DNA of 64,000 nucleotides from Asterias rubens (Eukaryota): the NCBI RefSeq assembly GCF_902459465.1, contig NC_047064.1, forward strand, positions 14,942,001-15,006,000. The letters run 5' to 3'. The translations under genes were made by a program, and so were the position numbers. Below are positions 4,464 to 37,400 of the stretch, piece by piece; the stretch's first letter is position 1, and each line of letters begins with the position of its first letter. Below the pieces are notes generated by a model. The model had not been told where the DNA came from. It searched no databases and was given only the letters and a program-made list of their open reading frames with translations.

Positions 4464-4764
4464 TTGTTACTTGTGCAACAAGTAAAGGTTTTTCTATCAT
4501 TATTTCACCGTCCCAGTGCTATGAGATTATTATTAGCAATTTCCTATTTTGTTATGATCAAAGGGTTGTCAAATCAAAATCCATCAAATAAATGTTTTTC
4601 TTAGAAAATTAATGTTACCCTTTACCAATCAATTATTTTGGTGACCACTCTTGATCAATAAACTCCACAGTTACCAAGAGCTCCAAAATAAGCAAAACAA
4701 ATATTTATGAAATCCATACAAACTCCACTAATGACCTTATAGTTCTGAGTGCTGATTTGTACAT

Positions 4765-9342: not shown

Positions 9343-9492
9343 GTTTGTTCTTCATTCTAGACATGGGACTGTTCAAGATTTGAAACATTAAGAAGTCATT
9401 GAATTCTACTCTAATTTGCGTCTTCCCATGTTGACACAATTTCAGTTTGTTGCAGCCACTTGTTTTCTCCATTTTCAACAGGGAACAATGTT

Positions 9493-9876
9493 TTAAAGAC
9501 AGTGGACACTATTGGTAATTGTCAAAGACCAGTCTTCTCACTTGCTGTATCTCAACATATGCATAAAATAACAAACCTGTGAAAATTTCAGCTCAATCGG
9601 TCATTGACGAGGCGAGATAATATGAAAGAAGTAACATCCTTGTCACACGAAGTTGTGCGCTTTCGGATGCTTGAAATCGAGACCTCAAGTTCTAAATGTG
9701 AGGTCTCGAAATCAAATTCGTGGCAAATTACTTCTTTCTCGAAAACTTTGTTACTTCAGAGGGAGCCGTTTCTCACAATGTTTTATACCACCAACCTCTC
9801 CCCATTACTCGTACCAAGTAAGTTTGTATGCTAAAAATTATTTTGAGTAATTACCAATATTGCTCACTGCCTTTAA
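9493..9876. mobile_element. MITE family A
   Basis: TTAA at both ends, family A TIRs and internal sequence. Confidence 0.8.
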
Positions 9877-12800: not shown

Positions 12801-13229
12801 TATGTCAAAGACAGGGAATGAACGTCGTTTTGGCAGTTGAGAATTCTTTTTTTGTTTGTAAGTGTTTATTTATTTATGATTGACTGGCACCATCCATCTA
12901 GTATGGCATATCCTTAATCACACACTAAAGGAAACAAAGTGAGTCACTAATCTATCTGAACACAGTGAACATCTAGAGATAATTGGGAAGAGTGTCTACT
13001 GTGTCAGCCAAAAAAGAAAACATCCATTACACAAAAAAAATGGCGACATAAGCAAGCAGTTCCGAACTGCTGACTTGACAAGGGCATACCGTTCCCCAAG
13101 CCCTGGTTTGGTTGGTAGAACCAGCAGCTAGCCTAGCCTCTACACAAATTGTCTGCTTGCTCAGGCCTTTTTCCTGCCTAGGTGTGTACAGCCAGCTAAA
13201 CTACTACCCATAGGAGTTTTACAGGACTG

Positions 13230-13290
13230 TGATTGGACTAAAGAATGACCCCTATGTCAGCTATCCCATAATAAGAGGAATAAAACCAGC
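13230..13290 (+). promoter_or_regulatory. Probable collagen core promoter
   Basis: Inverted CCAAT (ATTGG 13232-36), CArG-like CCATAATAAG (13266-75) and TATA-like AATAAAA (13279-85), about 110-160 nt upstream of the ATG. There is no upstream ATG between these and 13391. The TSS is not directly observable. Confidence 0.45.
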
Positions 13291-13370
13291 GGTATTTCTG
13301 TGTATCGGAGAGCCCCAGCCGAGGAACTGAACTGAGGCCACATCTCCAGTTTTTAAAACTTTATTGAAGG

Positions 13371-13409
13371 GACTACAGAGATTGTACATCATGTATAGCT
13401 TTGTAGGTC
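13371..13409 (+). promoter_or_regulatory. Collagen 5' stem-loop around the start codon (LARP6-type translational element)
   Basis: CTACAGAG (13373-80) pairs with CTTTGTAG (13399-406). Inside lies ATTGTA-CAT-C-ATG-TATAG, giving the same 6-nt and 5-nt bulge spacing as the human COL1A1 element as I recall it. Confidence 0.75.
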
Positions 13410-13475
13410 TATCCACCCGTTACAGGCGGTTACTCCTGGTCATAGCTGTTCTGTTCACCATAGCCGAGGCCCAAT
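13391..13475 (+). CDS. Exon 1: signal peptide [28 protein letters not shown]
   Basis: ATG at 13391, hydrophobic core and AEA|Q cleavage-like site. Phase-1 donor T|GTAAG at 13476 matches the phase of the VWC exon. It lies within the collagen 5' stem-loop. Confidence 0.9.
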
Positions 13476-16400
13476 GTAAGTCAATTTTATTTTCTATTTT
13501 TTTCCCCCCCAAGTATAAAGTTTCCAAAGAAGTTGTGTTTTTTTTTTTGTATTCTTGATTCAATCTCATGCATGATGGTAAAGTCAACAAGCTTACTTGT
13601 GTGTTTGGAAACAAAAAAACTTTGAGCACAAACAAAACAAAATGTTTATGAAATTTTTTTATCCTGTGTTTTTCACAAAGTTTTTTTAAAATTTTATTGC
13701 ATGCTTTTAAGAATTACTTACAATCTGAATGATGTTTTATCTCAAAGCACTTTTGAAATGCTCTGCATGCCTGCCTCTCTCCCACATACCCCCTAACGAT
13801 CCTTGCCAAAATCGCTAAAAAATATTGTGGTTTATTACTTGATTAAAAATTATTTACGGACCCAAAAAAAAATTCAATTGTGAATGGGTATTTATCATCT
13901 GTAATCGTATATTCTTTTGTACAGTGGGAGAACTTGTGTGGACAAGTTCATTTGTTTTTTAAATAGTCTTTTGTTGTTGTTCTATCATTGGGCTGTACTC
14001 TTCGAAGTTCCAGTTTGAGAAAAATTCCTTCATTGAACAGACCAGTTGAAACAAAAGTCTACTCATCGCAAAGCAAATTATTGTACATATTTCCAGTTCC
14101 AACTGTTTGGTGATACTTTGTTTGAAAAAACATGTTGTTTTATCTATGAATACTTCCATGTCAAGAATTTTGGTTTTGCCGTAAGCGGCTTCTACCGATT
14201 GCAAACCAAACGCAGAATATGTTTTCCATAAATCAAGTCTTCAAAATGATAGAACGTCTGGTGGATATGAGTAACTTTAAGTTGTTGTTGATTGTACCCT
14301 GTTGTCCGTTGTTCTACTAGCTCCAAGGTAGTCCATCATTTATAGCCTCAGTGTGTTAGACTCTGGGAGTGATCAGATAGCAGTGGTTTGAAGTTGGTGA
14401 AAGCAAATCACACGTTGACTCGAGCGATGACATGTAAGGGACACTTGATCAGGAAATGATCATTTAAAGACTAAATCTTGATTCAGGACAGAGCTAATGG
14501 TTCCAAAACAAACACACTTCAAAACTGATAGAAGATCGTTTCCACTATTTTGAATTCTCTGATTGGATTAGATTGTAGCCTTTGTACAAAAGATCGTTGT
14601 AAGAATTGTCTTGAAAAAAATTTGGACTGATAAAAATCCGTTTATTTTATTTCTAATTGGTGAAACTGAAAGGAATCACTTGCTGGTGGTTGAGTTTCAC
14701 ATTTTGCAAACTTGCCTAAAGTTGATCTTGTCTGTTGTAAGAGAAAAACCGTTCAGAGAACAATGCAGATACTTATAAAGATTGTGTTCTATTTCTATCC
14801 ATTTAAGTATTCCATGTTTTACCAGACATATCCCCTCCCCTGAAAACTAACCCTTGTGTGACCATAGCGGTCACAAGCTTGTACTGAAATGCCCTCAGTG
14901 GAAGAAAACAAAAATTATTGGACTGATTCAACCTTTTTTTCCAATGTTTCCCATATTAAGAAAATTAAAATCATTTGGTTCCTGAATAATTTTCACGACA
15001 CTTTTCCTGAAAATAACAGGGCAAAAAATCAACAAGATTAACAATGCCAGGGCGTATGGTGATGATTAAATACATAAATTAATGGTCTTGACAGGACTAC
15101 CTTTTTCTTTCCAGTCTGCTAAAAGCAATTAAACATTTTAAAAGAAACTCCCTAATGAAAAACACTTGCTACATTTACAATTTGTTCAACACCAATTGGA
15201 ACACACTTTGCCAAGTATTGTCTTGTCTCGCCCCTGTTTAATATTCATGAAAGAGAGGGAGGAGTCAAGTTTTTGATTGACATTTGGTTTTTGTGCTTTG
15301 TAAGAAATAACTGCTGGCTCAGCAACTTGGATCAAAAGGCTTTAAAGTTATGTTTCTCTGCAAGCTCAATGAAAAGTTCCTTTGTTCAAATTTCTTTCTT
15401 TTTTACTAGGATTCATATGTAGTGATCTTGTTATTAGTTGTCGTCTTTGTTGAAGATTGTCATGAAGTTGTTGGAAGAGTTTCTATGTGACTTATTTTGT
15501 GTTTTCTTGAGATGTTTATTTGCTGGGTGGGGGTAGGTAGTTTCAACGGAAGGAAAATATTACCAAACCCAGTTTTATGTTGTTGAAGATTGTCTTGAAG
15601 TTGTTGGTAGAGTTACTACCTGTTTTGTGTTTTCTTTGCATGTTTGTTTGCTAGGGGTGGGTGGCTGTGTTGAAGATGGTTTCAGCACATGGACAATTTT
15701 ACAAAAACCTAGATTGTTTTGGGGAACTTTTCAAAGTTGTGTGAGAATATCACTCGGTAAAGGCAGTGTGCCAAGTCTACCCAATTTGAACAGCTAAATC
15801 AGCAACTTTTTGTGAGATTCTTGAATGACCCTGAAGGATCTGGCAGATGCTGAGGTACCCTCTGACCTGACAAGGCTGATATTAGTTCCACTTGCTCTGG
15901 GATCAACCAAAAAGCTAATAACTCCCCTCCAAGATTGATTAGAGCAATTTAAACTTATGTTCCCCCCTAAGGATTGCCCTGCTCTCGTTTTTTGTTGTCT
16001 TTCTTTTGGTGAGCATGTAAGTTTAACAAGGCTTGATCGGGTTTCCAAATGACAAACCGAGCAACCCTGAAATTTGGGCCCCAAAGAAGTCTCCAATTGA
16101 ACTCATTTCTTTGATAACAGTCATGGGACAAATATTTTGAATTATACCCTCCTCTTTTGTCAAGGCTACTGGTATTTCACATCATCTTGAAATATCATCA
16201 AAATGCAGGGAAAACAAAGTAACTTGAAAGATCATTTTTCAAAACTGTTTCCTCGGGGGGACACAAAGACCCAGCGGCCAGCCTGTCAGATTAGTTGAGC
16301 AGGCATAATGGCAAACAGCCATAAAACTTGGGGGAAAGAGTTAACAGAATTGACTTGTGACCTCGGTGAAGCTGGTTTGGGCCAATCAGAAGTTGCCTCG

Positions 16401-19400: not shown

Positions 19401-22400
19401 GGAATCTTGTTTGTGTGAGGATGTGAGTGAGGTTTTGTGTTTTTTAAACAGTTTTATGAACAGTACAGAAAACAATTTATCCACAACTAAAACTTCAATA
19501 GAATAAGTAAAGGTTGATGTAAACTTAAGAAAACAATAAAAGTATGAGACATGACTTTTGCTGACGTTGGGTTTTGACATAAAAACTAAACACAGACCCA
19601 GGTACTCAACCCAGGTGTAGTGCATTTGTTTTTTTTTGTATTTGAAACCTTCGAACATAAGTACATAAACATGTAAAATTGTCCTGGTCAAGACCAAAGT
19701 AAAAAAAAAAAAAAAAAAAGTTTGATGACAAGGAAAGTGGACCCGGAAATGAAAACTTTGAATTTGTGGAATACTAAATGATTAAAGAATATTTAGTTTT
19801 GGTCATGTCACCTTGAAATCTTTTGAAGTTACAACTTGGATTTATACCCATCCATCCATTGATTTAACACGGGAAAAAAATCCCATGATATCGTTGGTGG
19901 GCCTTAAAAATGAGAGGCGGTTTGCTGCGGAAAGTTTAAAAATGTTTGATCGTTCACCCTTGCCAAATAAAATTTAATATTGGCATTGATTGAGTTTAAA
20001 ACACCGATTCAAAACGACTATTGAAAATTGTGATGATTTTGAAACTGGATAGTTCGCGTGCCACATTTTGGTTCCAGTGTTGCCAGGAGCTGAGGAAGAT
20101 GCCTCGTCGTCGTCAACGTCGTACTCAAGCTCGACATACTATGAGAATCATCTTCCGTGTTTTCACTTGAACGAGCTCTACATGCACGGATCTGAGTGGA
20201 AGTATAATGATTGCACAACGTGCTTTTGCGATAATTCCACAACTAGATGTGACATGGAGAGTTGTCCGCGATTACCATGCTCTGAACCTATCAAGCTTGA
20301 GGGTGAATGCTGCCGAAAATGCCCTTTCTGTAAGTAAGCTTTTGAATCAAAGGGGAAATTAATTTACTTCTTGGTGGTTTTATTTAAGAAAAATAAAGAT
20401 TAAATTCTTTTAAATTTAAGGGCCTTTTTAGTTAAAAATTGCATTCTCAAATTACTAAGGAAGTAGTGTTTTTTTAATAACCTATAAACTGTATAACCTT
20501 ATAACCTAAATTTTGTTCAATCAAATGATGCCCATAAGAAATTCCAATGACATTGAAATGGCATTAATCATTTCCGGCCCCTATTTCTTGCTAGATGTAA
20601 TGACAACTGCAGTATGTTTGAATACTTTTGTGAAATCAAATTATGCCGAAAAAGGAAGTCCGACAAAAATGAAAAAGCCACTAATAACTTCCCGCCCTTT
20701 TTTCTTGCTAGATGCAATAATAACTCAACTGTCGCCCTCATTGACGGGGGCCTCAGGATCTGTAGCAGAAGGAGAGGAAAACAGAGTCCAACTTGATCTC
20801 GGCATAAATTTTGTCGATTCACAAGATACCACATCAATAAATGGTAAAAAACTCTGGCAGTTAAGTGTCTGGACCAGTCGAGATAAAAGGGGCGAAGCTG
20901 CGAAGGTTGGTTTTGTTGAGCAAGCCTTCTCGACGGCCCAAGAAAACACACCCTTGCTAAAGAGGAGTCCATTTCGCTTTCGCTATATAAATTACCCGAT
21001 GGACTTGACGGGTGAGAGATGTTCAGATGTTAAGTTCATTTGTGTGAGATTGGCACAGGGGGAGAAGCCAAACCCTGATTTTTTCTTCAGTGCTGAGCCG
21101 GATGATGAAGTGTTGAAGGAGTGTATTGAAGCACCTGCCTGTCATGGTAAGTGTGTACTGTAAAAAAAGTTGTCCGTTTGTCATTTAAAAAAAGTCAAAA
21201 GCAACTATTTGAAGTTTTCTTCATTGTATATTTTGTATGCGGTGACACCATGTGTATAGCTGCTTGCTGGGTAGATTATGTTCTTTTGAGAACTGTCTTG
21301 CTATTTATTCTAATGCTGCAGAATAGATTTCTTTTTGGAATTTGAGAGATTTCTTGGTTCCAAATAGAACTGGTTTAAGTAGATAATGCAAAATGCCGTG
21401 AGCCCTGAACCAAATAAACAATGATATCCTGACCATGAAAAAACTTAAATCCCACAGTTTTCTTCATGTTTTTGATGTTTTCTTCATATCTTCTAAAATG
21501 ATCTGAATAAGAAATGATAATAATGCATTTTTACCTCAATATTTCTGTGGAGGGTGCTGCTGCAACTTACGCCTACAACAATATTTTCTAACTCTTTTGA
21601 TTTCAGGTGTTGTCATAAGGGGTCTGACATGGAGCTACAAAGCAATGACTGTAATTGCTGGTCAGGCAAACCCACTCTTCATCAATGCAGTGGCTCACTT
21701 CACCTCCACCAGTAGTAGTGTGTCCGGGAACAGACTATGGCGTCTTGGTATTTTCGGATCCAAGAATGAAGAGGGGACCGGGGAACGGTTCAACTACGTC
21801 CGACAGACACTGCCAGCAGCAGATGCCAATATGCCGTTGGTGGACGGAAACGATATCAAGTATGCCGATGCTATGGCAGAGTTTGATATCGCAGCAATTG
21901 GCTGCAATGGATTCAATTATGCGTGTATGGAGCTGACGAAAGGGGACAAGCCATCCCCCGATTTCACACATTCGGTTTTGGATGACGAGGACGGTGACAA
22001 TATTCTGACGCTTTGTGAAATGGCGACATGCAGAGCTGGTAAATATAACTTACAAATTGAAATAGTTTCCTGAAATCTTTTTCTAAAACTTTGCCTCAAC
22101 TAGAAATACAACAACTGAAAAGTTAAATAGCTTTCTGCAAATGTTTTCAAAACTTTGCCTTATCTAGAAATACAACAACTAAAAAACTTCTACTATAAAC
22201 AATCAAAAGAAAATAGAGAAAGACTATTCATGTAAATTGACAAGTTTCTTATTCTTGTTTTTGCCCAGTATCGCACATTTTAGATATTGACACTGAGCTT
22301 AAGTATGGGTCGATCCTTGATAGTCGTCCTATCAACCCCTTCAGCATCACCATGGAGATCGATGGTGGAAATGTTGGAGCGGCAGGCGAGGACCTCTGGA

Positions 22401-25400
22401 GAGTCAGTGCCTTCGGCAGCGAATCGCCCGACGGGCTCGGGGAAAAGTTTAACGTCCAGTCCCAAGTCCTGAACGAGGAGCAGCAGGACATAACGTTGGA
22501 ACTTCTTCGACCGATGGATCTCGGTCCCGTCAATTTCAATTTTGACATGACCGATCTGACTTGCAAACAGGTCAAATACATGTGCTTGTCGTTCAGCAAG
22601 CTGGACGAGGCCACCACAGTGTTTTCGTTGCATCCTGTCCCAGACGAAAGCGTTCTCACACAGTGTGAACCGACTCATTGCGAGGGTAGGTAACAAAGTA
22701 GCATTTCAGTAACCTTCTTTAAAAATTGTAAATTAACAACATCAAGTGTGCACTTTTTATCTCTGTTCTGATTGAAACGGCTTTTTATTTGCAGTTTGTA
22801 TGTAAGTGTTTAATGTAAAAAAGGATTTTAAAATCACTTGATGAAGGTATGGTGGTCCCATATCTCTGAATTGAAAATTTGTGCATAGATTGCAAATTTT
22901 TATCTAGAATATGCATTTTATTTAGTTTGTGTTTTAAACATTCAAGTTTTTATATGAGTTTCTTAGAAATGTGAATTTAAGATTGTGATGGTCTTTCTTT
23001 TTCTTGTTACTTTCTTCTTCTGTAGCTGTTTATGCTCGTCAGTTAGCCTGGGACTACGAGTCCGAGGAGATCACTCTAGGAATGAAAACTCCACTCGTGT
23101 TGAGTAGCACAGTCCACTTCACACCAACGGGTGAGAATGTCACAGGCACGGACCTGTGGAAACTCACACTCTTCGGAGGGAAAAACAAACGGGGGACAGG
23201 GGACAGATTTACTCCCACCGAACAGCTCCTCGATGCCTCCCAATCTGCTACACCCTATTATTCGGGGTCAACCCTACAATTCGACGGCATCTCGACCAGG
23301 TTTGAACTGGGGGCGTTGGGATGTGCCGAGTATGACTTCTTCTGTATGGAGTTCTCACAGGCTGAGAATTCTCAACCTGAGTTTCATTTGCTGTACGAGA
23401 CGAACACGACATCTTTAGTTCATTGCAAGAGAATGGAATGCTCATCAGGTGAGTGCTTTAATGGCTTCAATATTGGTGTACTTAGTCGTTTTTGATTGAG
23501 GAAATCAGCCGGTAAATAAACACAGGAAGAGGATGCTTGACTTACTGTCGCCAATTGTTACGAGCCTTAATTAAAATCAAACTTCAAGAGAATAACAAGT
23601 TTTTCAGACACAGTTTTTAGAAAACACTAGGAAACGACGTCATTACTTATTCAAACCAAGGTTATAAAATTGAAAGGGTGTGGTTAAATTAGCATTGATA
23701 AGCCTTTGGAAGACTCTGCTTGGGTCGAAACGTCAAGCCATTGTCTATCTTTAGCCTGAAAATAATATATGCGGACATGTCTCTAACCTTTTAGTTTGAA
23801 TTGCCTCTATTCTAGATTCTAATTTCGCAAATGAAACTATTTTTCGATCGAGCAGGTTTCAGAAATTTGATAAAAGGTCTTTAAAATATGTTTCTTTGGA
23901 TTCGTCTTGCAGTGTTGTCAGCGGAAAACTTCCAAGCCCAACTCGTGAAGGGCTCCATTGTCGATGGCCGCCGCAGCAACAGGCTACAGCTCAGAGCCTC
24001 AGTTGACAGTACCGATTCTGGCATTGAGGGCGACGATCTCTGGAAGATGAAGGCTTACGGCAGCACAAACTCTGATGGGAGTGGGGTGAGGTACAACGAG
24101 TTGGACCAGGTGCTGACCAATCTTCAGCAAGACACGGGCGTGGCAGCTCATGATACCCTGAACTTTGTTCCTATCGGTCTGAATTTTGATATGGAGGAAC
24201 TCGGCTGCAGCGAGGTGAAGTACATCTGCCTGGAGTTGCAAAGGGACCCCAGCTCATCTGTGATTTTCTCTCTGGAGTCTGAAGGCGGGCTAACGAGGTG
24301 CATGGAGTTGAGATGCGAAGGTGAGTTGTTTCATCAAAACCAGAAATTTAGTTTATTTCAATCGGAAATTCCTAAGCATTCAAGGAGCATGCAGTTGTGG
24401 TTAATTAAATGTAAATCTTAAAAAGTTTGAAAAATGCTCACTCTTAATGAACAAATAAATCAATTGTGGTTCATCTTCTTTTTGTATTTGAACTAAATCT
24501 AAACAATCGTAGGGTATTTTCTTTTCTTACATTTACAATTTTTAAACCCTGAAGAAAGGCACTCTAAAACTTTGAATTGGTGGGCAAAAGAAGATGTACA
24601 AAAATGTCCACATTATATTTATTGAGAAAATAGAATGAGCTGTTGCAAACTGTTTATCAACAAAAAGCACCTGTGGTATAAACGCAAATAATTGGTATGG
24701 CCTGATGGTTCAACCCTAGCAGAATCTGTCTCGAAAATATATTTATTTAAACATGTTTTTGTTTTGTCATTTAGGTGTTTATGCTAAGAGTGTTACCTGG
24801 GACTATCAACCAGGGAGTATTACCCTAGGCCAAGACAGTCCTCTGGTAGTCAACGCAATGGTAGAAATGGCCAACATGGGTAGCCCGATCTCCGGATCCA
24901 GCCTCTGGCAACTCGGCCTATTTGGCAGCAAGTCCCCAACAGGCGAAGGTCGACGCTTCAACGCCAAGAGACAGATTCTGAGTCGGAGTCAGGAAAGATT
25001 GGATTACGCCAAACTGGGCACCACGCTAGATTTCAGCAATACGGGCACCATCTTTGATATCGGAGCAATCGGCTGTACAGAGTATACCCACATCTGTGTT
25101 GAGTTTGAGCAGTCTCAGACGCCGAGGCCCGACTTTTATTTCTTCACCGAGGATGGCTCCTCATCTCTGGTTCAATGTCAAGAGAGATCCTGCAACTCAA
25201 GTAAGATTTAGGAACATCTGTTCTCTTTCCTCCTAGAAAATAATTGTTATCAAATTTTGTTGGTATTATCAAAGGTATTGAAAAGTGTGTATTTTTAGAA
25301 AAAGGACTTGGTCTAGTCTTTGATTTTGAAATGGTAAATCAAAGGACTAGGTCTAGTCTTTGATTTTAAAGAATCAATTACTTTCAGTGATCACACAAGA

Positions 25401-28400
25401 CATAAACTACATAGCAAGACACTAATATCTTTCCAATCGTAACTGTTTTCTTTTGCAGATGTTGCTGTGAAGCCTTTAACCACCAACTTGCGAAGAGGGT
25501 CGATCGTTGATAATCGTCCGATAAACCCGATACGGTTGGATCCAATGATAAGCAGTGTCGATCTGGGTGTGGCTGGAACAGACCTGTGGCAGCTATCGGC
25601 CTATGGAAGTAATAACGACGATGGAGCAGGCACTCGCTACGCTGAGCAATCTCAAATCCTCAACCAGAGACAAACCAATAAGATGCTTCCCCCCGATGGG
25701 GACGAACTTGATTTTGGGCCCATCGACATGAACTTTGACATGACAGGACTTGGCTGTGCTGATGTTAGATTTATCTGCACAACATTGAGTCGAGATCCGA
25801 GGGCGAGTGTTGAGTTTACGCTAGAGCCCCAGCCAGATCAGTCTGCACTGACCAGCTGTCAGCCCTTAGTCTGTGAAGGTAAGCCACATCATTTTGTAAT
25901 AATTTTGTTGTTGTAAAAAAATATGATTTCTTTTGTAATCATGTAGAGTCTTTGTGAGATGGATGTGAAGTTTTATAAGTGAAAGGTATTCTGATCAGTG
26001 CTCTACAATTTCTCCTCTAGGTATTTATGCTGAAAAGCTTGAGTGGACACTTGATACCGCAGAGGTTGTCCTGGGTCAAAAGAGTCCGGTCATCATCCAT
26101 GCAAACGTGACAATGGCCGACTTGGGATCAGACATATCTGGCCAGAAACTTTGGAAGGCCAGTCTCTTTGGCAGTAAAGACCCAAACGGTGAGGGTGATC
26201 GATTCAGCGAGAGTGAACAGATCCTAAACCAAGAAGGTATCAGTCAATCTGCCCAACGAGGATTAACGATGGTCCTTCCGGACAGTTCCACTCTGTTTAA
26301 TGTTGGAGCCATTGGGTGCACTAACTGGAGATACGCCTGTTTAGAATTTGGACAGATCAACAGCCCAAAGCCTCCATTCCACTTTTTCACAGTCGGTGGT
26401 GAGCCAACACTGATCAAATGCCAAGAAAGACCCTGCTCTTCAGGTAAGATAATTTGTAGATTAATTTTTAAGGAGATATTCATTGTTTTCAAACACTAAT
26501 ATGGGACAATTTGACAAATTATTAACATTTGGTTCTTCTTCATCTTCTGCCAGGAATAGATGTTCTTTAGTCACTGACTCAATCTTTGGTTATTAAATTA
26601 ATTTGTGCAGTTTTTTTTTCGTAGTCTTCAAGCGCTACCACTACCTTTTTAGTGTTATCTATCAGACTTACATGGCTATTCTTATTCTGTTCATTTTCCC
26701 TTTAGCTCTAAAACTTAATCCACTGCAAACCTCTATTACATCTGGCTCCGTTGTTGATGGCAGACCGCAAAATCGAATTCAAATGCAAGTGTCAACAGAT
26801 GGTAGTGATGTTGGTGTCGACGGAAACCGTCTGTGGGAACTAGCAGCCTTTGGTAGCAGCAACCCTGATGGATCGGGGACAAAGTACCTTGAGAAACGCC
26901 AGGTTCTTACCCCAGCTCAGGGCGACACTCCTTTGAATCCTGGAGAGCTCCTGGATTTCGAAGTTGTGGACTTTGATCTTGACATGAGAGACAACGGATG
27001 CGGGGAGGTTCAGTATGTATGTGTGGAACTCAGGAAAAATCCGAGAGCATCTGTGGACTTTGTCATCGAGCCTGTACCTGATGAAAGTGCTCTGACAAGT
27101 TGTCAGCCAGTCAAATGTGATGGTAAGTACACTCAACTCTAGCTATAAAGAAGTTCTGCGTGTAAAGAATACTCTTATCTCATTTCTGCTTTTGTGGTTT
27201 TGTGTTTTGTGTTCTCAGGGGAACAAAAGCTCTGGACTCAAATTCATAAAGACTCTTAGCACAAAAAAATCCTTAGCACAAGAAAAATTTCCTTGGCAAA
27301 AATGTTTACCATCCAGAATACAGTTACCATTATAGTCTTTTATACTCGAGTCTTTTCTTGCTTAACTAAGAATTTTTTTGAAGCAGAATATTCAGCTGAA
27401 CAGCTTGATGAAAGTTGGAAGTAGCGATGCTGACATATTACAGCTTGGTCAGTTGATTTTTCTGGCATACTTCATAATACTCATACCCATGTTGTTTGTT
27501 TTGTAGGAGTGTTCTTCAAGTCACTTGAATGGTTGTATGAACATGACACCATCATGCTTGGTGAGGAGACGGACATGACCGTCTTTGCCATCGTTGAGAG
27601 CAAAGAAGCCACCAGAGATGTTGAGGGGGAGGGTCTCTGGCAGTTGAATCTCTTTGCAAGTCGCAGTGACGACGGCGTCGGTGAACGTAACCGCTTACAG
27701 AGACGTATTCTCAAAGAACCAACAGCTAGCCAGCCTCTTGCCGGTGGGACCCCCCTGAATCTCCTCGATGTCAAGGCATCGTTTGATTTGGGTGCGATAG
27801 GATGCGGTGACTATGGGTATCTCTGCCTGGAGTTTGAGAGGGGCCAACGTCCAGAACCAACATTTTACATGTTCACTGAGGCTGGGACAGAAACACTTGT
27901 CAGCTGCAAGCAACGAACATGCCAATCAGGTGAATAAAAAAATTAATTAACATAATTCTTTAAAATACTCCTTTTTTCAGGAGACATCCACATTAGTTTG
28001 AGAATTTATGAACCCCCAAAACTTGCATATCACGGTTTCTCAATTGAATTATACTTATTAGAAATCTTTCTTCTTTCTGAACAGCCATTGGTATATCAGG
28101 CATGGAGTCATCACCTATCTCGGGAGATGTTGTCGAGGGTAGACCAGTAAATCCGTTGATTTTCAACCTCTCGGCCATCCCCGCTCCAGACACATCAGGC
28201 CTCAGTGGCACAAACCTTTGGCAAGTGAGCGTCTTTGGCAGCGACAGCCCAATCGGCGAGGGCCCAGAACTGAATCCCCAGCAGCAAGTTCTCACTGGGG
28301 ATCAGCTTGATTTGGACCTGGAACCAGGAAGCCCCATTGATTTCGGAGCTGTAGGCGTCAGCTATAACATGTTAGGCATTGACTGCGCTTCAATGGGTTA

Positions 28401-31400
28401 TATCTGCGCTAGACTCAGTAAGAACCCTGCTGCGAGTATTGACTACACATTGGAAGGGTCACCAGATGAGAGCGTGTTGGTGGATTGTCAACCAGTGGAT
28501 TGTAGAGGTAAGAAGCTTGAACACAAAGTTCTTATAATTATGTTCAGTTCTTTATGACTTCTGTTTGGAGAGCTTATTTCAACCTGTTAATTGTTATGAA
28601 GCTGTTGCCCAAAAAAATATGCTCTCATAATTGTACCTTTGTTTCTGAAGCAATTGAGCAATTCCATTTGTGTTCCACTCACAGGTGTTTTGGCCGAGGC
28701 AATGAGCTGGGAGTACACTGAAAGAAACACTGTGATCAACCAACCCAGTCCGTTGACAATTGACGCCATTATCTTCACAAACGATAGCCGGCAGTTGTCT
28801 GGTTCTGATCTGTGGCGCTTGGGTCTTTACGGGAGTAGAAACAATAACGGCACAGGCCCACGTCTCAACTACACTGAGCAGATACTGAACGCAAGAGCAG
28901 CTTCAACATCTCTACCCAGCGGGTACCCGTTGTCTCTACGGAGTGTGCAGACTGAGTTTGATATCGGTTCACTTGGATGCTCAGAATTCACCCACATTTG
29001 TGCAGAGTTCACCCAGGGGGAGAATCCATCCCCAGAATTCAAGTTTGAAATTTCTCGGGGAAGGGACGTTATAACTGAATGCATTGAAGTGGAATGTGCC
29101 GCAGGTAAGAACAGACAAAATCCATTCAGTTTGAAATCAAATCTTTGGATAGAATCCATGAATTACCCCTATCAAATTGAGCTTTCAGTAACTCTTTTTT
29201 TTTGTATTCACTCCTACAGATGTCATATTGTCTGGGCTTTCTGCTACAATGTCCGACAACAACGTTGTTGAAGGTTCCGGTAACCTGTTCAGACTTCTTG
29301 TCCGAGCCACGCCTGCCCAAGACTCAAAAGGTGTTGCTGGTACCGGATTGTGGCAGCTTGATTCATATGTCACCCCTGATCCGACATCAGATATCAAGCT
29401 GGCGCCACAGACTCAGATCCTATTAAAACCACAACAAGATCTTATCCTCAGACAAAGATCAATCCTAGACTTTGGGAGCGTCGATTACAAACACGATTTG
29501 ACATCAGTACAGTGCAATGAGATGGGCTATCTATGTGTTGAACTCAGCAAAGGACCCTCACCGAGTGCTACGTTTGATCTGCTAACCGTACCTGAGGGAA
29601 GCATCTTAAAAGCTTGCAATCATTTGGAGTGTAAAGGTGTGAGGGCTAACAGTATTGACTGGTCCTACGAAGCAACCAACGTGGTTCCTGGCGAACAGAC
29701 TCCATTCTCTATTCAAGCCAGTGTCTCAATGGCTGATGGCACGCGGGAACTAAGCGGAGACGGCTTATGGAGGCTTGGTCTCTTCGGAAGTCGGAGTCCA
29801 GATGGGATCGGAGAGAGGCACGACTTCGTTCATCAAACCCTCAACGACGATAAAGCAAGTCAAATGATCGAGTCTGGTAAAAATCTTGGCTTGGCTGACA
29901 TCAATACACAGTTTGATGCTGGTGCTCTGGGATGCACTGACTTCAAGTACGTATGTGTAGAGTTTGCAAAAGGTGACAATGCAGAGCCCGATTTCAGCTT
30001 CACAGTTGCAAATAAAAGAAGTGAATATGCAGAGGAGAAGATAGTTTCCTGCAAACCAGCTCCTTGTGAAGCAAGTAAGTTCTACTTCATTTATTTTATC
30101 AAAAAAAAAGACAAATTTCATACATGTACCCTCTTATAAGCATGATATTATTAAACTAGAAATAGAAGTATTAAATGTAATATTTTATGGGTTTGCTCTT
30201 TCTTTCTCTCTCTCAAAAGGAGCTGAGTTTATCAACTTGAATGCAAATCTCATGGACACCAATCCAATCCTAGAGGATCATCGAGACAATGAGGTCTCCC
30301 TTTCCACTGTAGCTCTAGCTGGTCTCGACAGCAGCTCAGTCATGGGAGAGAACCTCTGGAAACTCAAATCTTACCTCTCCCCTAACCAAGACGGTAGAGG
30401 CAGGAAGTACGCAGCCACCGAGCAAATCTTATCCCCTACCCAGCAGAATGACCCGCTGAAGCCGGCTGGCTCTCTGATCTGGGATGACATGAGCGTGCCG
30501 CTTGACATGTCCGACTTAACTTGTTCCAAGACGCCGTATCTTTGCGTGACTCTGGAGAAGAACACGGACCCTTCAATGGAATTTACAATGCATGGAGTTC
30601 CAAATAATGGTATACTGACTGATTGCGTCGACATCACAAGTAGATGTGAAGGTATGCTGTTCAATTCCATCCATCTTTAATAAAACGTTTAAATAATTAT
30701 ACACTATTGAGAAGAATCCTGCTGTTTACGATAAACGACAACAAAATTGTTACTTTTTATCTTGCACAATTTTTTTTTCTTCTTTTGGACTTGAATAGAG
30801 TATACAAAATATTTATTGCAAGATAATAAAGTGGCTCATATTGCTTCATTCTTTCTGAAAGTTTGAAGGGTTCACTGCACTTCAGCCAACCTCATTAATG
30901 CATTGCACACAACAAGCTCCCACATCATTGTCCAATTAACCATGATGTCATCATTGTTTTTCCTAACACCAGGGGTGGTTGCCACGGGCATTGAATGGAG
31001 CCATGAAGCCAACAACTTCATGGCTGGACAGCCAGCTACTTTGAGCCTCAATGTCGCCATCCCAACCACAGAGGAGAGTCGTGACGTTGACGGCCTGGGG
31101 CTGTGGCGACTTGGCCTCTTTGGCAGTAGACAGGCGGATGGAGGGGGCCAACGATTGGGAAATGTCGACCAGATTTTGAACTCTTACCACCAGGCAAACG
31201 GCCTCAGCGGTGGGAACCCCCTGCAGCTCAGAGATATAACAACTCGATTTGATCTAAGTCAGATTGGGTGCACCGACTATCAATATCTGTGTGTGGAGTT
31301 TGACAAGGGGCAATCGGCTCAACCTGATTTTGCTTATAGAGTGTCGACGGGGGAGAACACGCTGGTTTCCTGCAAGCCACAACCATGTCGAGGTACTTTA

Positions 31401-34400
31401 ATTTTGTTGTTAATCAAGTACATATTATTCTTGTTAACCTTTTTAAATTGTTGGACATTTTTGGTTTGAGTTGATATACTTGGGGACACTTTGAAAGAAA
31501 AACCAAACAAAACAAAACAATAAAGTGACATTCAGGTGAGAGTTGTGGTAACACCTTGTGTAAATCTCTTTTTAGTAGGATTAAACCAACACTCATTCAG
31601 AAATCATTTTCTCAATCTTCATTCATTTCACACCATATTAATATGTTGTTAGCCAAGGTGTCACAAGCAAAGAGTTTGTTTCACTAAAGACTTGACATTC
31701 TGATTTTACTTTTTTTTTGCACAGGTGTTTATCTCACTGGTTTGGTTAGCCAGCCGGGCGTAATGGAACTCCGAGAAGGGAGTACAACAAATGAAATTGA
31801 GTTCTCCTCGGTGGCATCGAGCTCTCCTCTTGGTGGCGGAGTGGAAGGCCTCAATCTCTGGCGGTTGGCTGTCTATGGAAGCAGCCGGCCGGGAGGTAAT
31901 GGCCCCCGATACGGCTTCCAATCCCAAGCCCTGTCAGGTTATCAGAGCAGTATTCCTCTCCGGCACGCAGGAGATAGTCTGGACTTCCGCACCGTCCGAA
32001 CCAACTTGGACATGAGAGGAGTCAGGTGTTCTGATGTGAGACACATCTGTACAGTGCTTAGTAAAGACCCAATGTCGGTGCCACCGTTTCAGTTGATGGC
32101 GATTCCAAGTGAAGAAGTGTTGAAGAGTTGTTTTCCTGTACCAAGACGTGCATGCACAGGTTAGTCCCGAACACTTCTCAGTTTTAATCGTTGAACAATT
32201 ATAAGTGGCTATTGTTCATATATATTGAACAACTGAAGGAAGCTACTCTTCATAAGTTGGAATTAATCTGTGGTAATTTGTGTCGGATTTCAAGTTTTAG
32301 CAAATTCCTCTCTCTTTGTTTTCCTCAGGTCTGGTGTTAAGCAATCTTGATTGGAACATTGACAATGGAAAACTTCTCAACGACCAAGGGAATGATTTTG
32401 ATCTGGATGTCCGAGTGGACTCCCTCCCAGGTGGTGCCCAAGTCACTGGGAGCCGCCTCTGGCGAGTGGGCACCTTCGGAAGTAAAAACGGCGATGGGAC
32501 TGGAGACAGATTAGGCTACCGAGGGCAGATCCTAGATCGGCAGACAGCCTCTACTTCTCTCACCCCAGGCTCCTTCTTGGAAATGGACAACATTCCCACA
32601 TCATTTGATTTCTCTAGGCTCGGCTGCGGGTTAGAGTATCAGTTCTTTTGTGTGGAATTCGCAAAAGGCTACAAGGCTGAACCGGACTTCAGCTTAAAAG
32701 TAGAGAGCGGCAGAGGGAACAGTCTAATCAAATGCAGGGAGGTTGAATGCAAGAAACGTAAGTTTGTGAATTGCTGTTAAAATATTTTTTGTTTAACTTC
32801 CTCCATATTTATAAGATATTGATATTGAAAATAAACCACTTCTTTTCTTCAGTATCTGTTATTATTATAGTATTACTTTTTATCTTGCAGCTGTGGAAAT
32901 TGCACAAGTTAGAGCAGACATTGTAGGAACCAATCCAGCTTTGGTGGAGGGATCCACTTTCAATAGAGTGATGTTCACTTTCGAAGCAACCACAACCCCT
33001 GACAGTGGCTCTGTGTCTGGCGAGAGACTATGGGACTTGTCAATCTTTGGAAGTCAAAACCCTGTTGGTGATGGTGTCAAACATGCCCTTAAATACTCCT
33101 ACAATTTCAATAGATATCAAGAGGCTAAGACGGCCACAGGAGGCGGTGTAATAAATTACGGTTTTGTTGACACCAATTTTGATATGACTGGCTTAGTGTG
33201 TAATGACATCAACTTTATTTGTGCGACACTAAGAAAACATGACAGTCCCTCGCCAGATTTTGAGCTCGTACCGGTACCCGATAATCGTGTCCTGACAGAC
33301 TGCTTTAGAATCAAGTGTGATGGTAAGAAGAATTGACTGAAATTGTTCAATTATTTTTCATTTGAAATACACTAAAATTACCGCTGATTTCACAAGTCTG
33401 TACACAGCAAAGCCTGTTGACATTATCCCCTAGTTGGATTATCAAATGTAAACTAGATCTCAATCGAGTGAACTTAATCAACATATAAATATATTGAATT
33501 CACAACTTCTGTAAAAAGTGTTAAACTTAAATAAATAAATTGTTTTTTCCTTTTTTTTCCTGCAGGTGTGATTGTAGATGGTACTCGGTTAGAGCTGTCA
33601 TCACAAAGTGAAGAGCTTGACCCTGGCGTGAATGAGATGGATTTCTCTGTTTCTGTTGTATCGAGTAACAATGGTGCAGAAGTCGAAGGCAATGACTTGT
33701 GGAGGCTGGAAGTGTTCACGGCTAAAGACAGGGATGGCATTAAGGACAAAACCGTCCTGCAAACTCAGTCTCTGACCCCCAACTTGGCGAGTAGAAATCT
33801 TCGCGCCGGGTCACAGCTGATGTTCACCAATCTTGCGGCGGAGGTGGATCGCAATCTTGTCAACTGCCAAGGGAAAACGTACATTTGTGTTAATTTATAC
33901 CGTGGGGACAGACCCTCTGTTGATTTCAGACTCGAGGGTTCCTCAGACGGGGCTCTCACGAACTGCAAAGAAGTTAGCTGCGCCAAAAAACGTTAGTTAG
34001 TGGAAAAGAGCTACTTTCGAAGAATCTCAGAATATATCTGACACTTTTCCTTCGACTGTTTTTTGTTTACTGTTCTTCTTTCAAAAAGGAAGGTCTTGAC
34101 TGTTCAAATTTACTTCTTTTCTCTGATAATGGATGAAAGAATGTGGTGTAGTGTACAGTGGAATTTTTATGTTTTTTTTTGTGTGCATGGTGTTTAAAGT
34201 GAGATACAAAAGGATTCTTCATGTTGTGTGAGTTACTGCAAGGTTTGTCTGAGGTTTACTTTTCTGCTTTCTGTTTTCTTGTCATTTGTTTGTTGGTCAT
34301 ATCATCTGTATGTCAAATCATTAACCCTCGTTGAGCAATATATCATCACAGCCAACAACACCACTCTACCAAAGAAGTGTCAATTCCCTCAAAAATTACG

Positions 34401-37400
34401 AAGCCAGAGTCTTGGTTAGCATTCTGTTTGACCCTTTTGGATATGTTTTCCCTCCAATATTAACTAGTTCTTTCTATTTTCTTTTTGTTCTCTCCTTCTT
34501 GTGTTGTTACCTGATCGCCTGGATCCTTCTGCCAACAGCTGCCAATAAAATTGTAAGCAATCACTTTCCCTTCTTTTATTGATTTAGCTCTGATACATTT
34601 TAGTGTTTTCCCCATAACTGTCAATATTCTATGCAAACAAGCATTTCTTCACTTCTATAAAATGTTGACTTTTAAAACTGATTTCTTTAACACTCTGACA
34701 ATGATGTTTAGTACATTCTGTTTAGTCGTGGTCTTATCGAAATCATGAATTTTTGATACTACTTTCAAATCCTATTATTTATCGGGATTTTTGTTTTGTT
34801 GTGGCAGTTTGGCGCCAAGGGTGACCGAGGACCAAAAGGAGAGCCTGGAGAGGCCTTCGGAGGCGGTGGCAGCGGGGTGAGTATTTGAGAAGGAGATAAT
34901 TTTTGGAGTAAATCGTTTTTATAAACTGTGTCCAGAATGTTGTTAAAGACTTGTAAAACGATAACCATGTTTTTAAAATAATTTGTTAATGTGTCTTTTC
35001 TTCTCACCTTCATTTACAGTTTGTACCAAGAGCTGGGCCACCAGGAAACCCAGGACCCCCAGGACCATCTGTAAGTATTTATGAGTTTGCATTTTTTGTT
35101 AAAGTATTTTTAATCATTCTTGTTCTGCTTCTTTATTTTTCACATCATTATTGTGTTTGTTTTGTAATCAACTTTGTTTCCCCCCCCCGTGTTTCTCCTT
35201 CTCCATGATAGGGATCTCGTGGTGAGATTGGTGATTCAGGACCATCCGGACCCTATGGACAGAAGGTGAGAATATAAAAATTACAAAAACCTTTTGATTG
35301 GTTTAGAGCACGCCACATGATATGTCTTAGTTTTACTGAAAAGCCGCAGGAGTGTGACATGCCATATCTGAATCAAACAGTTTACTATACCCTTGGCAAC
35401 CAATACATTATACCGATAGCTACTAGTGTACTATATCAATAGCAAATGGTGTATATTTATAGAACACTCCTAGGATCACCTCGTTGTTTTAACCATAGCA
35501 CTGAAAGCATTCAATATTTGTATACTGTCATATTGCCGACCTCTCTATCAATTCAACCTTGTAAAAAATATTTCTTGTTCATCTAAAAAAAAAATCATGT
35601 TTTTCATCCTTTCAGGGAAATGCTGGATCTCGTGGATTGAATGGACTTCCCGGTCAACCTGGACGCGCTGGACCACCAGGACCCCCAGGAACCGTATGTA
35701 CTATTATACATATCCAGTAGTGAATGTTGCAAACTAAACCATTTTTGTTGCTGCTCTCTAAGTTTTGTCTTGAAGTTATACAAAAACGATATCTCATCAG
35801 AAAAGAAATGGTGCATGCACTGAATCCGTTTCAACTGAGAAAGCTGCATTTCCTTTACTTTGATTGTTCTGATTTTATCTGCTTTATGAAGTTTATATAA
35901 AGATGCATTCTGTATAGTGAAAAGTTGATGATGTTATATGAATCATCATATTTTTCACACACACAAAATAATTGTTGGCTTGTTTTTATTTTTGGCGATA
36001 AAAAACACATGATGGTTTTCAACACAAAAGACTGCATGCTTTTTTGTATAATGCCTTTTATTTTAAAGTTTAATTTATGTTCAATTGTTTTTTTTTTTTT
36101 AATCCTTCCCTCCCCATCACAGATTGCCCAGAGTGCCAACATTGGACAACAATCTTACAAGGGAGTCCTCCCAGGAGCCTACCAGTACCCACAAGCCTCC
36201 GTTCAAGTAAGTTCTGGTTATTTCAAAAATCTTCCTTCTTGGAACATTTTTTCGCTCTCCTTGCCCCTCCCCCAACCACATACCTTTGTTAGCAAAAGCA
36301 AAAGCAATGTTCATATTTAAGACTTTCTTCTCTCTGGAACTCCTCTCTGGAAGGAAAACAGTTACAGGCATGTGATTTCTCAGGATTTTTGTTCCTGTTA
36401 TCAAAGTTCTTAAAGCCATGAGCCTTCAAGTTTTCTAAAGAAATCGCTTAAAGCCATTATACACTTTCGGAACAGAAAAAAAAAGTTCACAGATTTACAA
36501 ATTATTTACAGGGTTTACAGAAGGTAATGGTAAAAGACTTCTCTTGAAATATTATTCCATGAAATGCTTTACTTTTATTAAAACAATTATCAATTCTCGA
36601 CATCGAGAATTACTGATTTATAGTAAACACATGTCATGACACAGCGAAACAGGCAGAAACAAGGGTGGGTTTTCCCGTTATTTTCTCCCGACTCCGATGA
36701 CCGATTGAGCCTAAATTTTCACAGGTTTGTTATTTTATATGTAAGTTGTGATACACGAAGTGTGGGCCTTGGACAATACTGTTTACCGAAAGTGTCCACT
36801 GGCTTTAAGAAAGAGGTTCACATTGTATGTAAACCTGTAGTTTTGTACTTCTGTTGATGCATACTTTCTGTTAATTTCCAACATGTTAATATCCCCGCAT
36901 GATATTCTTCCTACTAATGTCTTGTTACCACATTACTACAAAGTAAAATGATTCTCAAAATGCTTTATACTATCGAAAGCTGCTATACTTCTTACCAAGT
37001 AATATTTTATTGCCATTAATGAAAAGTGATTACCAAACAAGTCCCTTCGTTTGTATTCATTTTTTAATATATTGCTGTTTTGACGTTTTTGTTTACAGGG
37101 ACCCCCAGGACCACGTGGTCTTCCAGGTAGCGCAGGAAACCGAGTAAGTTGATGTTAAAACAAATCATAAGGTTTTTAATTCTCGATTCAATAACTATCA
37201 TTTTGTGTGTTGATGATATGTGTTTGGGAAAACATTTGTTGACCATGATTTTTTTAATTTGCATTCTAGGGAGCACAAGGTTTGATGGGACCTGCTGGAC
37301 CTACTGGTGAGCCCGGACCCTCTGTAAGTTGACTCCCCAAGTTGATTATATTTTGAGCAAGTCTCTAGTGTATCTTAAATAAAATACAACTTGATGGAAG

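What the first reader, a model, noticed from the sequence alone, without database searches (positions are those of the whole stretch)
13391..34552. All N-terminal modules are frame-symmetric cassettes: one gene could encode 1,418-aa to 4,329-aa chains
Seen: the VWC exon and all 19 SURF exons are phase 1/1 with lengths divisible by 3, so any subset can be skipped. Exon 1 can splice straight to the 14-nt microexon, giving [18 protein letters not shown] and a 1,418-aa chain laid out like COL1A2 or COL2A1-IIB. Only joins from exon 1 or VWC (both end in T) to module 10 or 15 (both start GA) create a TGA stop. Known: alternative use of the 4-Cys repeats was reported for sea-urchin 2alpha, and COL2A1 skips its VWC exon. 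Inference: a combinatorial splicing system that could tune propeptide length per tissue.
Basis: partly seen in the sequence, partly recalled or inferred. Interest (0 to 1): 0.78.

Follow-up and report, generated by a model that had tools for sequence, protein, structure and literature searches.

The report
Starfish collagen gene: short and giant isoforms
A starfish fibrillar collagen gene hides 20 optional exons (one VWC domain and 20 "SURF" domains) in its first intron; RNA reads show them skipped as a block in most transcripts and included as a block in a few, a switch already described for a sea urchin collagen gene.

Summary
Exon 1 (13391-13475), the VWC exon and 19 SURF exons (20 modules, one exon fused) are all phase 1/1 with lengths divisible by three. 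Only E1/VWC to S10/S15 joins make TGA.

RNA settles the two extremes:
- In one raw RNA run, 464 reads join exon 1 directly to the 14-nt microexon; 4 reads join the last SURF exon to it.
- A 3.5-kb transcript contig from another run carries S12(end)-S20-microexon-next exon in the canonical order.

No partial skip was seen, but power was very low and only S12-S20 was laid. So the data fit an all-or-none switch; combinatorial use is unsupported here. RefSeq isoform models of paralogous SURF collagens do drop 1, 2, 4 or 6 modules.

The architecture is conserved in Patiria miniata: 65% identity, 20 colinear modules, the same fused exon and a 14-nt microexon. There the block is annotated as a separate nested gene. 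The block is bounded by the gene's weakest acceptor and one of its weakest donors.

Exposito et al. (2010) described the same short/long arrangement for sea urchin COLP1alpha. This is a new member of a known kind.

The parts
13391..13475 (+). Exon 1: start codon and signal peptide ([28 protein letters not shown]). It ends in T (phase 1). Its donor AAT|gtaagt ranks 63rd of 65 from weakest, i.e. among the strongest in the gene.
   Evidence: RNA loose ends ...ATAGCCGAGGCCCAAT joined to the microexon, 464 reads. Conserved in P. miniata L001:3756.
13558..13604 (+). Conserved block in intron 1, 85-130 nt after the exon 1 donor. It holds TGCATG (13569-13574) and a TGTGTGT run. Candidate splicing regulator or first-intron enhancer (inference).
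   Evidence: The only intronic stretch of the E1-VWC intron that aligns with P. miniata: 20 and 16 consecutive identical bases.
20078..20329 (+). VWC exon, 252 nt, phase 1/1. Its acceptor is the weakest of the gene's 65.
   Evidence: Pfam VWC E=2.6e-12. Acceptor score 1.1 against a mean of 10.8, SD 4.5. The P. miniata acceptor also has a purine-rich tract.
20712..21146 (+). SURF exon S1 (435 nt, phase 1/1)
21607..22038 (+). SURF exon S2 (432 nt)
22269..22685 (+). SURF exon S3 (417 nt)
23026..23448 (+). SURF exon S4 (423 nt)
23913..24320 (+). SURF exon S5 (408 nt)
24775..25200 (+). SURF exon S6 (426 nt)
25459..25878 (+). SURF exon S7 (420 nt)
26021..26443 (+). SURF exon S8 (423 nt)
26706..27122 (+). 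SURF exon S9 (417 nt)
27507..27929 (+). SURF exon S10 (423 nt). It starts with GA, so it makes TGA after E1 or VWC.
28085..28507 (+). SURF exon S11 (423 nt)
28685..29104 (+). SURF exon S12 (420 nt)
   Evidence: Junction 29104>29220 seen in RNA.
29220..30074 (+). Fused SURF exon S13+S14 (855 nt; module border at 29636/29637, where AAAG|GTGTGAGG looks like a donor but is not used).
   Evidence: The contig reads straight through it. The same fused exon (858 nt) exists in P. miniata. The predicted structure is two beta-sandwich domains, pLDDT 94.9.
30220..30651 (+). SURF exon S15 (432 nt). It starts with GA, so it makes TGA after E1 or VWC.
   Evidence: Junction 30074>30220: 5 reads plus the contig.
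30973..31392 (+). SURF exon S16 (420 nt)
31725..32159 (+). SURF exon S17 (435 nt)
32329..32757 (+). SURF exon S18 (429 nt)
32891..33322 (+). SURF exon S19 (432 nt)
33566..33991 (+). SURF exon S20 (426 nt). Its donor AAC|gttagt ranks 4th weakest of 65. If it is not spliced, the frame reads K-K-R-stop.
   Evidence: The donor and the stop are conserved in P. miniata. Junction 33991>microexon: 4 reads plus the contig.
33992..34538 (+). Intron between S20 and the microexon. It is unique sequence with no AATAAA. It carries read depth while the other SURF introns show about none, so it may be partly retained.
   Evidence: Depth table.
34539..34552 (+). 14-nt microexon CTGCCAATAAAATT (phase 1 to 0). 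It is the common acceptor for exon 1 (short form) and S20 (long form).
   Evidence: P. miniata has a 14-nt microexon at the same place.
34808..34876 (+). First constitutive exon after the switch ([23 protein letters not shown]; start of the minor helix).
   Evidence: Bin-mean depth about 204 (roughly 590x on the 69-nt exon itself) against about 2x on SURF exons in run X12.

Best explanation
This is a clade-A fibrillar procollagen gene of a starfish. Earlier notes of this scan name the species as Asterias rubens. Its architecture matches the sea urchin 1alpha gene (COLP1alpha).

The first 'intron' (21,063 nt) contains a block of 20 exons coding 8,748 nt: one VWC domain and 20 SURF modules. Each module is predicted to be a beta-sandwich domain.

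The exon 1 donor has two partners:
- It can splice to the 14-nt microexon. This gives a 1,418-aa chain whose N-propeptide is only the minor helix, like vertebrate pro-alpha2(I).
- It can splice to the VWC exon. The whole block then follows and exits through S20 to the same microexon, giving a chain of about 4,334 aa.

Shown: both exits into the microexon, the dominance of the short form in three runs, and the canonical chain S12-S20.

Inferred:
- That exon 1 joins VWC.
- That the choice is all-or-none.
- That the choice is set at two weak 'gate' sites, the VWC acceptor (weakest in the gene) and the S20 donor (GTTAGT, conserved), perhaps with the conserved TGCATG block after exon 1.
- That the long N-propeptide stays on or between fibrils, as reported for the sea urchin 2alpha and 5alpha chains.
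For: Gene anatomy:
- Phases, lengths and stop-making joins check out. The full model has 66 or 46 exons, 4,334 or 1,418 aa, and a 1,014-aa uninterrupted helix.
- Pfam finds VWC, Collagen and COLFI.

RNA:
- In X12, 464 reads carry exon-1-end + microexon before 34808, and 4 reads carry S20 + microexon.
- X13 and X14 give 6 and 4 short-form reads and 0 long-form reads.
- An X1 contig of 3,497 nt (depth 39) runs S12 end-S13_14-S15-...-S20-microexon-next exon.

Selection on the block:
- All 20 modules keep 4 Cys.
- Differences between the window and X12 reads in the SURF exons are 15 synonymous to 15 non-synonymous, against 23% synonymous expected (p=0.001).
- The P. miniata ortholog is colinear over 2,897 aa at 65% identity with 6 gapped alignment columns. 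It has the same 19 exons, the same fused exon, the same phases and a 14-nt microexon.
- In P. miniata a 1,416-aa collagen gene spans the nested SURF gene model.

Splice sites: VWC acceptor rank 1/65, S20 donor 4/65, exon 1 donor 63/65, all counted from weakest.

Precedent: S. purpuratus COLP1alpha has 1 VWC and 16 SURF exons in a 22.8-kb intron 1, a 5-kb and an 11-kb mRNA, and 4 ESTs (PMC2852846).
Against:
- Run X1 holds only 0.28 of the sampled words of 20000-28600, where exons make up 0.57 of the stretch. For the 3' half it holds 0.57 of 0.62. This could mean lower coverage, allelic differences or skipping of 5' modules.
- The SURF part had about 2x depth in X12, so partial skips below roughly 20% of long transcripts would be missed. 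Contigs drop rare forms.
- The splice-site scores come from a matrix built on this gene's own 65 introns.
- No tissue labels were available, so regulation by tissue is not shown.
Confidence: 0.72

Rival explanations
1. Combinatorial cassette system: subsets of the 20 phase-1/1 exons are skipped in many combinations, tuning propeptide length by tissue.
For: - Every subset except four joins keeps the frame.
- RefSeq isoform models of paralogous SURF collagens drop whole modules. S. purpuratus alpha-2 collagen has forms of 3,198, 2,918 and 2,638 aa (gaps of 280 and 560 aa, i.e. 2 and 4 modules). Diadema setosum has gaps of 281 and 842 aa. A. rubens LOC117288629 and P. miniata LOC119729772 each have a one-module gap.
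- The title of the 1992 paper on the 2alpha chain reports alternative splicing (cited in PMC2852846).
- X1 holds only half of the exonic words of the 5' half.
Against: - No skip junction inside S12-S20 reached the listing threshold in any of four runs.
- The X1 contig is the full canonical chain.
- The internal GT at 29637 is unused.
- Loose ends at the microexon agree 99% with exon 1.
- All 20 modules are kept one-to-one between two starfish orders with 6 gapped alignment columns. That fits a unit used whole.
Confidence: 0.15
2. The SURF block is, wholly or in addition, its own product. Transcripts that keep the S20-microexon intron stop at K-K-R-TAG and encode a collagen-free secreted VWC+20-SURF protein of about 2,945 aa. 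This matches the nested gene model in the P. miniata annotation.
For: - The P. miniata model LOC119729773 ends exactly at ...KKR.
- The unusual donor C|GTTAGT, which creates the TAG, is identical in both species.
- The intron 33992-34538 has depth 1-2 in X12 (SURF exons about 2) and 3-4 in X1 (exons 39), while other SURF introns show about 0.
- The intron is unique sequence.
- Sea urchin models (S. purpuratus LOC575485 and the Diadema proteins) also end just after a last SURF exon.
Against: - S20>microexon>next-exon junctions exist in two organisms, so the block is not an independent gene.
- There is no AATAAA in the intron.
- Aligners miss 14-nt exons, so gene models that run into the intron may be artefacts.
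- The P. miniata model lacks a signal peptide.
- Retained-intron RNA may be nuclear or degraded.
Confidence: 0.2
3. The long form is splicing noise or a decaying relic, and only the 1,418-aa chain matters.
For: The long form is only about 0.4-0.9% of transcripts in X12 and was not seen in X13 or X14. No protein covering the SURF block of an Asterias or Acanthaster ortholog was found in the databases.
Against: - 8.7 kb of open frame with all 80 cysteines kept.
- 65% identity and colinearity with P. miniata.
- An excess of synonymous differences.
- A well-covered (depth 39) fully spliced contig in X1.
Confidence: 0.03

Closest known systems
Strongylocentrotus purpuratus COLP1alpha (1alpha fibrillar collagen), short and putative long isoforms (Exposito et al. 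2010, PMC2852846, section 3 and Fig. 3)
   Same: - The first intron (about 22.8 kb there, 21.1 kb here) can encode one VWC and a run of SURF modules without breaking the frame.
[quoted passage not shown]
- The short form dominates, and a rare long mRNA exists.
   Different: - 16 modules there, 20 here.
- Sea urchin there, starfish here.
- There the long form rested on 4 ESTs and an 11-kb band. Here the junctions into the microexon are read directly.
- Orthology by sequence was not tested, because I could not retrieve the 1alpha protein.
Sea urchin 2alpha and 5alpha chains with SURF N-propeptides (Exposito 1992; Cluzel 2004, as cited in PMC2852846 and PMC10817530)
   Same: VWC followed by about 140-aa four-cysteine modules before the minor helix. 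Modules can be spliced out: RefSeq isoforms lack 2 or 4 modules.
   Different: These are paralogs (34% identity in the propeptide, 43% in the helix and C-propeptide). Their SURF part is constitutive with partial skips, not an all-or-none block.
Patiria miniata LOC119729773, nested inside a 1,416-aa collagen gene (GCA_015706575.1, JADOBP010000013.1)
   Same: This is the ortholog: the same 20 modules, 19 exons, fused exon, phases, 14-nt microexon and S20 donor.
   Different: It is annotated as two genes. The nested model has no signal peptide and ends by reading into the intron. Exon 1 there ends in G, so the four TGA joins are specific to the window's species.
COL2A1 IIA/IIB; tenascin-C and fibronectin FN3 cassette exons (from general knowledge)
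   Same: One extracellular domain per phase-1/1 exon. Optional inclusion changes an N-propeptide (COL2A1 exon 2 encodes VWC) or a rod of beta-sandwich domains. Tenascin-C also has 'small' and 'large' main forms.
   Different: One exon in COL2A1. In tenascin-C many intermediate combinations are documented. Here 20 exons behave as one unit in the data at hand.

Membership tests
Clade-A fibrillar procollagen | Uninterrupted major triple helix of about 1,014 residues, built mostly from 54/45/108-nt phase-0 exons | tested here: met
   1,014-aa Gly-X-Y run; exon table; Pfam Collagen E=1e-41
Clade-A fibrillar procollagen | COLFI C-propeptide | tested here: met
   Three C-terminal exons hit PF01410 with E from 2e-11 to 6e-15
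Echinoderm SURF-bearing procollagens (1alpha long, 2alpha, 5alpha) | VWC domain followed by tandem ~140-aa four-cysteine modules before the minor helix | tested here: met
   Pfam VWC. 20 modules with exactly 4 Cys each. 34% identity over 1,556 aa to the N-terminal region (signal peptide, VWC and SURF array) of S. purpuratus alpha-2 collagen. Pfam has no SURF model.
COLP1alpha-type short/long switch | Exon 1 splices past the whole VWC/SURF block to the exon before the minor helix | tested here: met
   464, 6 and 4 reads with exon-1 end + microexon + 34808 exon
COLP1alpha-type short/long switch | A long mRNA joins the SURF exons to the collagen exons | tested here: met
   4 reads and one contig give S20 > microexon > 34808 exon; the contig chains S12-S20. 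The 5' junction, exon 1 > VWC, was not tested.
COLP1alpha-type short/long switch | Sequence orthology to S. purpuratus 1alpha | not testable with these tools
   The 1alpha protein was not among the listed hits, and no query of the right length could be given by reference.
Combinatorial cassette-exon array (tenascin-C type) | Transcripts with different subsets of the repeated exons | tested here: inconclusive
   None listed in S12-S20.

The most novel reading that the evidence does not exclude
One collagen promoter may give three matrix products:
- the short procollagen;
- a giant procollagen carrying a rod of 21 domains;
- a collagen-free VWC+20-SURF protein, made when the S20-microexon intron is kept.

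The conserved GTTAGT donor then supplies an immediate stop (K-K-R-TAG). The balance would be set at the two weak gate sites and the conserved TGCATG block, and it would tune fibril surfaces in mutable connective tissue. Public annotation misreads this as a nested gene (P. miniata) or misses it (Asterias).
Probability: 0.18. Interest if true: 0.6.

Novelty: new member of a known kind. Interest (0 to 1): 0.4.

Why it matters
- It extends the sea urchin 1alpha short/long collagen switch to starfish. The arrangement (block in intron 1, 14-nt microexon as common acceptor) therefore probably predates the split of the two classes.
- It gives direct junction evidence, which the 2010 report lacked.
- It corrects gene models. 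About 8.7 kb of conserved coding exons appear in no Asterias protein found in the databases, and they are split off as a nested gene in Patiria.
- It offers a simple, testable splicing model (a weak entry acceptor, a weak exit donor, and a conserved UGCAUG block) for how 20 good exons are skipped together.
- SURF propeptides are suspected players in echinoderm mutable collagenous tissue. Knowing which chain can carry them matters for that field.

Tried and rejected
- The look-up of sequencing runs was busy twice before it answered.
- A HMMER scan of 1.84 billion representatives with the S13_14 exon found no close relative listed. The Patiria ortholog surfaced only later, through word searches and local BLAST.
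- A search with the helix and C-propeptide of an Acanthaster paralog returned mostly vertebrate collagen VII. It found neither the window's short chain nor sea urchin 1alpha.
- P0165, a Logan-derived protein, turned out to be unrelated to this locus (24% identity).
- I looked for the A. rubens paralog next to the window to fix the species. There was no overlap, only a shared ~390-bp repeat family.
- No sequence conservation was found around the microexon between the two starfish.
- The acceptor at 20087 for VWC was rejected because it would make TGA after exon 1. The upstream duplicate acceptor at 20595 for S1 was rejected because Patiria's S1 exon is also about 435 nt.
- A fold search of the S13_14 model gave only generic tandem beta-sandwich matches such as RbmA, complement MG domains and transglutaminase barrels. 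No specific family came out.

Full report
**What is there**

- Exon 1 starts at the ATG at 13391 and ends at 13475 with a lone T before GTAAGT.
- The 14-nt exon CTGCCAATAAAATT lies at 34539-34552 between CAG and GTAAGC.
- Between them I mapped one VWC exon (20078-20329; Pfam VWC E=2.6e-12) and 19 SURF exons from open frames and AG/GT borders.
- Every one of these exons starts two bases before a codon and ends one base into a codon. Every length is divisible by three.
- One exon (29220-30074, 855 nt) holds two modules, so there are 20 modules.
- Trying all donor-acceptor pairs gave exactly four stops, all TGA: exon 1 or VWC joined to S10 or S15.
- I completed the gene with 44 further exons: minor helix, telopeptides, a 1,014-residue helix and the COLFI C-propeptide (Pfam).
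- The totals are 66 exons and 4,334 aa with the block, or 46 exons and 1,418 aa without it.

**Is the symmetry meaningful?**

- The 20 modules are old, diverged copies: 17-46% pairwise identity, 4 Cys each, and an alternating A/B register (same-type pairs about 32%, different-type pairs 25%).
- Tandem exon duplication can only keep the frame if phases are symmetric. Phase 1/1 is also the usual class for extracellular domain exons (general knowledge).
- So the symmetry is inherited. It permits skipping but does not show it.

**RNA evidence (stretch 28901-34900)**

- In raw RNA run X12 the exon at 34808-34876 has a bin-mean depth of about 204, roughly 590x on the exon itself. The SURF exons average about 2x.
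- 464 reads carry, before 34808, the letters ...ATAGCCGAGGCCCAAT + CTGCCAATAAAATT. That is the end of exon 1 joined to the microexon.
- 4 reads carry S20 + microexon + 34808.
- Runs X13 and X14 give 6 and 4 short-form reads and no long-form reads.
- In run X1, one 3,497-nt contig (depth 39) chains the end of S12, S13_14, S15, S16, S17, S18, S19, S20, the microexon and the start of the next exon.
- All junctions are the ones I had predicted. The donor-like GT at 29637 is not used. No junction skipping a subset was listed.
- Both extremes are therefore real. The short form is the main mRNA in X12 (about 99%), and the long form is fully spliced into the collagen message.
- Limits: only about 14 junction reads fell in the SURF part of X12. 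Contigs hide rare forms. VWC-S11 and the exon 1>VWC junction were not examined.
- X1 holds 0.57 of the sampled words of the 3' stretch (exonic maximum 0.62) but only 0.28 of 20000-28600 (maximum 0.57). This is unexplained: it could be coverage, alleles or 5' skipping.

**Is the block functional?**

- Differences between the window and the X12 reads inside the SURF exons are 15 synonymous and 15 non-synonymous. Random change would give 23% synonymous (p=0.001).
- A Patiria miniata protein (LOC119729773, 2,920 aa) aligns to VWC+S1-S20 over 2,897 residues at 65% identity with 6 gapped alignment columns. Each module matches its counterpart at 57-77%.
- Its locus shows a 1,416-aa collagen gene spanning a nested 'gene' that is this block.
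- In that DNA I found:
  - exon 1 (MYSFVGLVSRYRRLLL..., phase 1);
  - the same 19 SURF exons with the same phases;
  - the same fused double exon (858 nt);
  - a 14-nt microexon (CTCCTAGCAAGTTG);
  - the same odd S20 donor, C|GTTAGT.
- Word searches with an Acanthaster paralog and with the Patiria protein found no Asterias or Acanthaster protein covering the block. The long form therefore seems unannotated there.

**Species**

- Earlier notes of this scan name the genome as Asterias rubens.
- I could only show two things. The window shares a ~390-bp repeat family at 86-91% identity with an A. rubens chromosome locus. Its nearest ortholog found is a starfish gene.

**How it may work**

- I scored all 65 donors and acceptors of the gene with leave-one-out matrices. 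Ranks count from weakest.
  - The VWC acceptor is the weakest acceptor (1.1 against a mean of 10.8).
  - The S20 donor is the fourth weakest donor.
  - The exon 1 donor is among the strongest (63/65).
  - The microexon acceptor is also weak (8/65).
- Patiria's VWC acceptor likewise has a purine-rich tract.
- The only conserved piece of the 6.6-kb exon 1-VWC intron is a block 85-130 nt after the exon 1 donor. It contains TGCATG and TGTGTGT.
- From this I infer a two-gate switch. By default the weak VWC acceptor is ignored, and exon 1 waits for the microexon. Where the acceptor is activated, the short introns (115-547 nt) of the block are removed in order, and S20 joins the microexon. This is inference, not shown.
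- The predicted structure of S13_14 (pLDDT 94.9) is two beta-sandwich domains. Matches are only generic, to tandem Ig/FN3/MG-like folds. This fits a beads-on-a-string propeptide.

**A side observation**

- The S20-microexon intron carries reads: 1-2x in X12 and 3-4x in X1. The other SURF introns show about none.
- The intron is unique sequence without AATAAA.
- Unspliced, the frame ends K-K-R-TAG, exactly where the Patiria model ends. A collagen-free VWC-SURF protein is possible but unproven.

**What is known**

- Exposito et al. (2010, PMC2852846) reported the following for S. purpuratus COLP1alpha:
  - embryonic cDNAs with only the short propeptide;
  - a 5-kb mRNA and a faint 11-kb mRNA;
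  - four ESTs from the hidden exons.
- The 2alpha chain was reported to undergo alternative splicing in 1992 (cited there).
- RefSeq isoform models of paralogs lack whole modules: 2 or 4 in S. purpuratus alpha-2 collagen, 2 or 6 in Diadema, and 1 in A. rubens and P. miniata paralogs.
- So cassette use of SURF exons is known in the family, and the short/long switch is known for the sea urchin counterpart.
- New here:
  - the starfish case;
  - 20 conserved modules;
  - direct junction reads;
  - the annotation gap;
  - the gate-site pattern.

**Verdict**

- The best reading is a binary block switch of a known kind (confidence 0.72).
- Combinatorial use is unsupported but not excluded (0.15).

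Noticed in passing
window 33992-34538: The intron after the last SURF exon carries read depth (1-2x in X12, 3-4x in X1) while the other SURF introns show about none. If it is left unspliced, the frame stops at once (K-K-R-TAG) because of the unusual GTTAGT donor, which is identical in Patiria. This points to possible retained-intron transcripts encoding a collagen-free VWC+SURF protein.
   Followed up: partly
window 13558-13604; L001:3930-4003: This is the only conserved block in the 6.6-kb intron after exon 1. It has 20 and 16 identical bases in a row between two starfish orders, and it holds TGCATG and TGTGTGT.
   Followed up: partly
window 29220-30074; L001:17923-18780: Two SURF modules share one exon (the intron was lost) in both Asterias and Patiria. 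The old border keeps a donor-like AAAG|GTGTGAGG, which the transcript contig does not use.
   Followed up: yes
window 20510-20720: The acceptor region of S1 is locally duplicated (...CTATTTCTTGCTAG at 20595 and ...TTTTTTCTTGCTAG at 20712). Both copies are in frame and lie in one open frame, so use of the upstream one would add 39 aa. Patiria's exon length favours 20712.
   Followed up: partly
proteins P0001, P0320, P0321 (sea urchins): Proteins of 4,900-5,500 aa carry about 22 SURF-like modules. P0320 and P0321 also carry FN3 and a tyrosine-phosphatase domain (Pfam PF00102 in the precomputed lists); P0001 only has a phosphatase-like C-terminal end by eye. SURF-type modules are therefore not confined to collagens and fibrosurfin.
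   Followed up: no
window 4078-4467, 9492-9880, 48005-48390, 52982-53375 and others: An interspersed repeat of about 390 bp is present in many copies. It is 86-91% identical to copies in an A. rubens chromosome locus (L002).
   Followed up: partly
window 38255-38965 and 52533-52910: Two triple-helix exons are fused (711 and 378 nt) among the usual 54/45/108-nt exons. The 711-nt one is also a single piece in Patiria (L001:27597-28307, 83% identity).
   Followed up: partly
window 20000-28600 in run X1: X1 holds only about half of the exonic words of the 5' half of the SURF block, but nearly all of the 3' half. The depth of the S12 contig is 9.75 against 39.4 for S13-S20. This is unexplained: it could be 3' bias, alleles or 5' module skipping.
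   Followed up: no
window 13227-13499; L001:3595-3867: The promoter, 5' UTR and exon 1 are 75% identical to Patiria over 279 nt, with two stretches of 93-94%. This fits the collagen 5' stem-loop noted by another reader.
   Followed up: no
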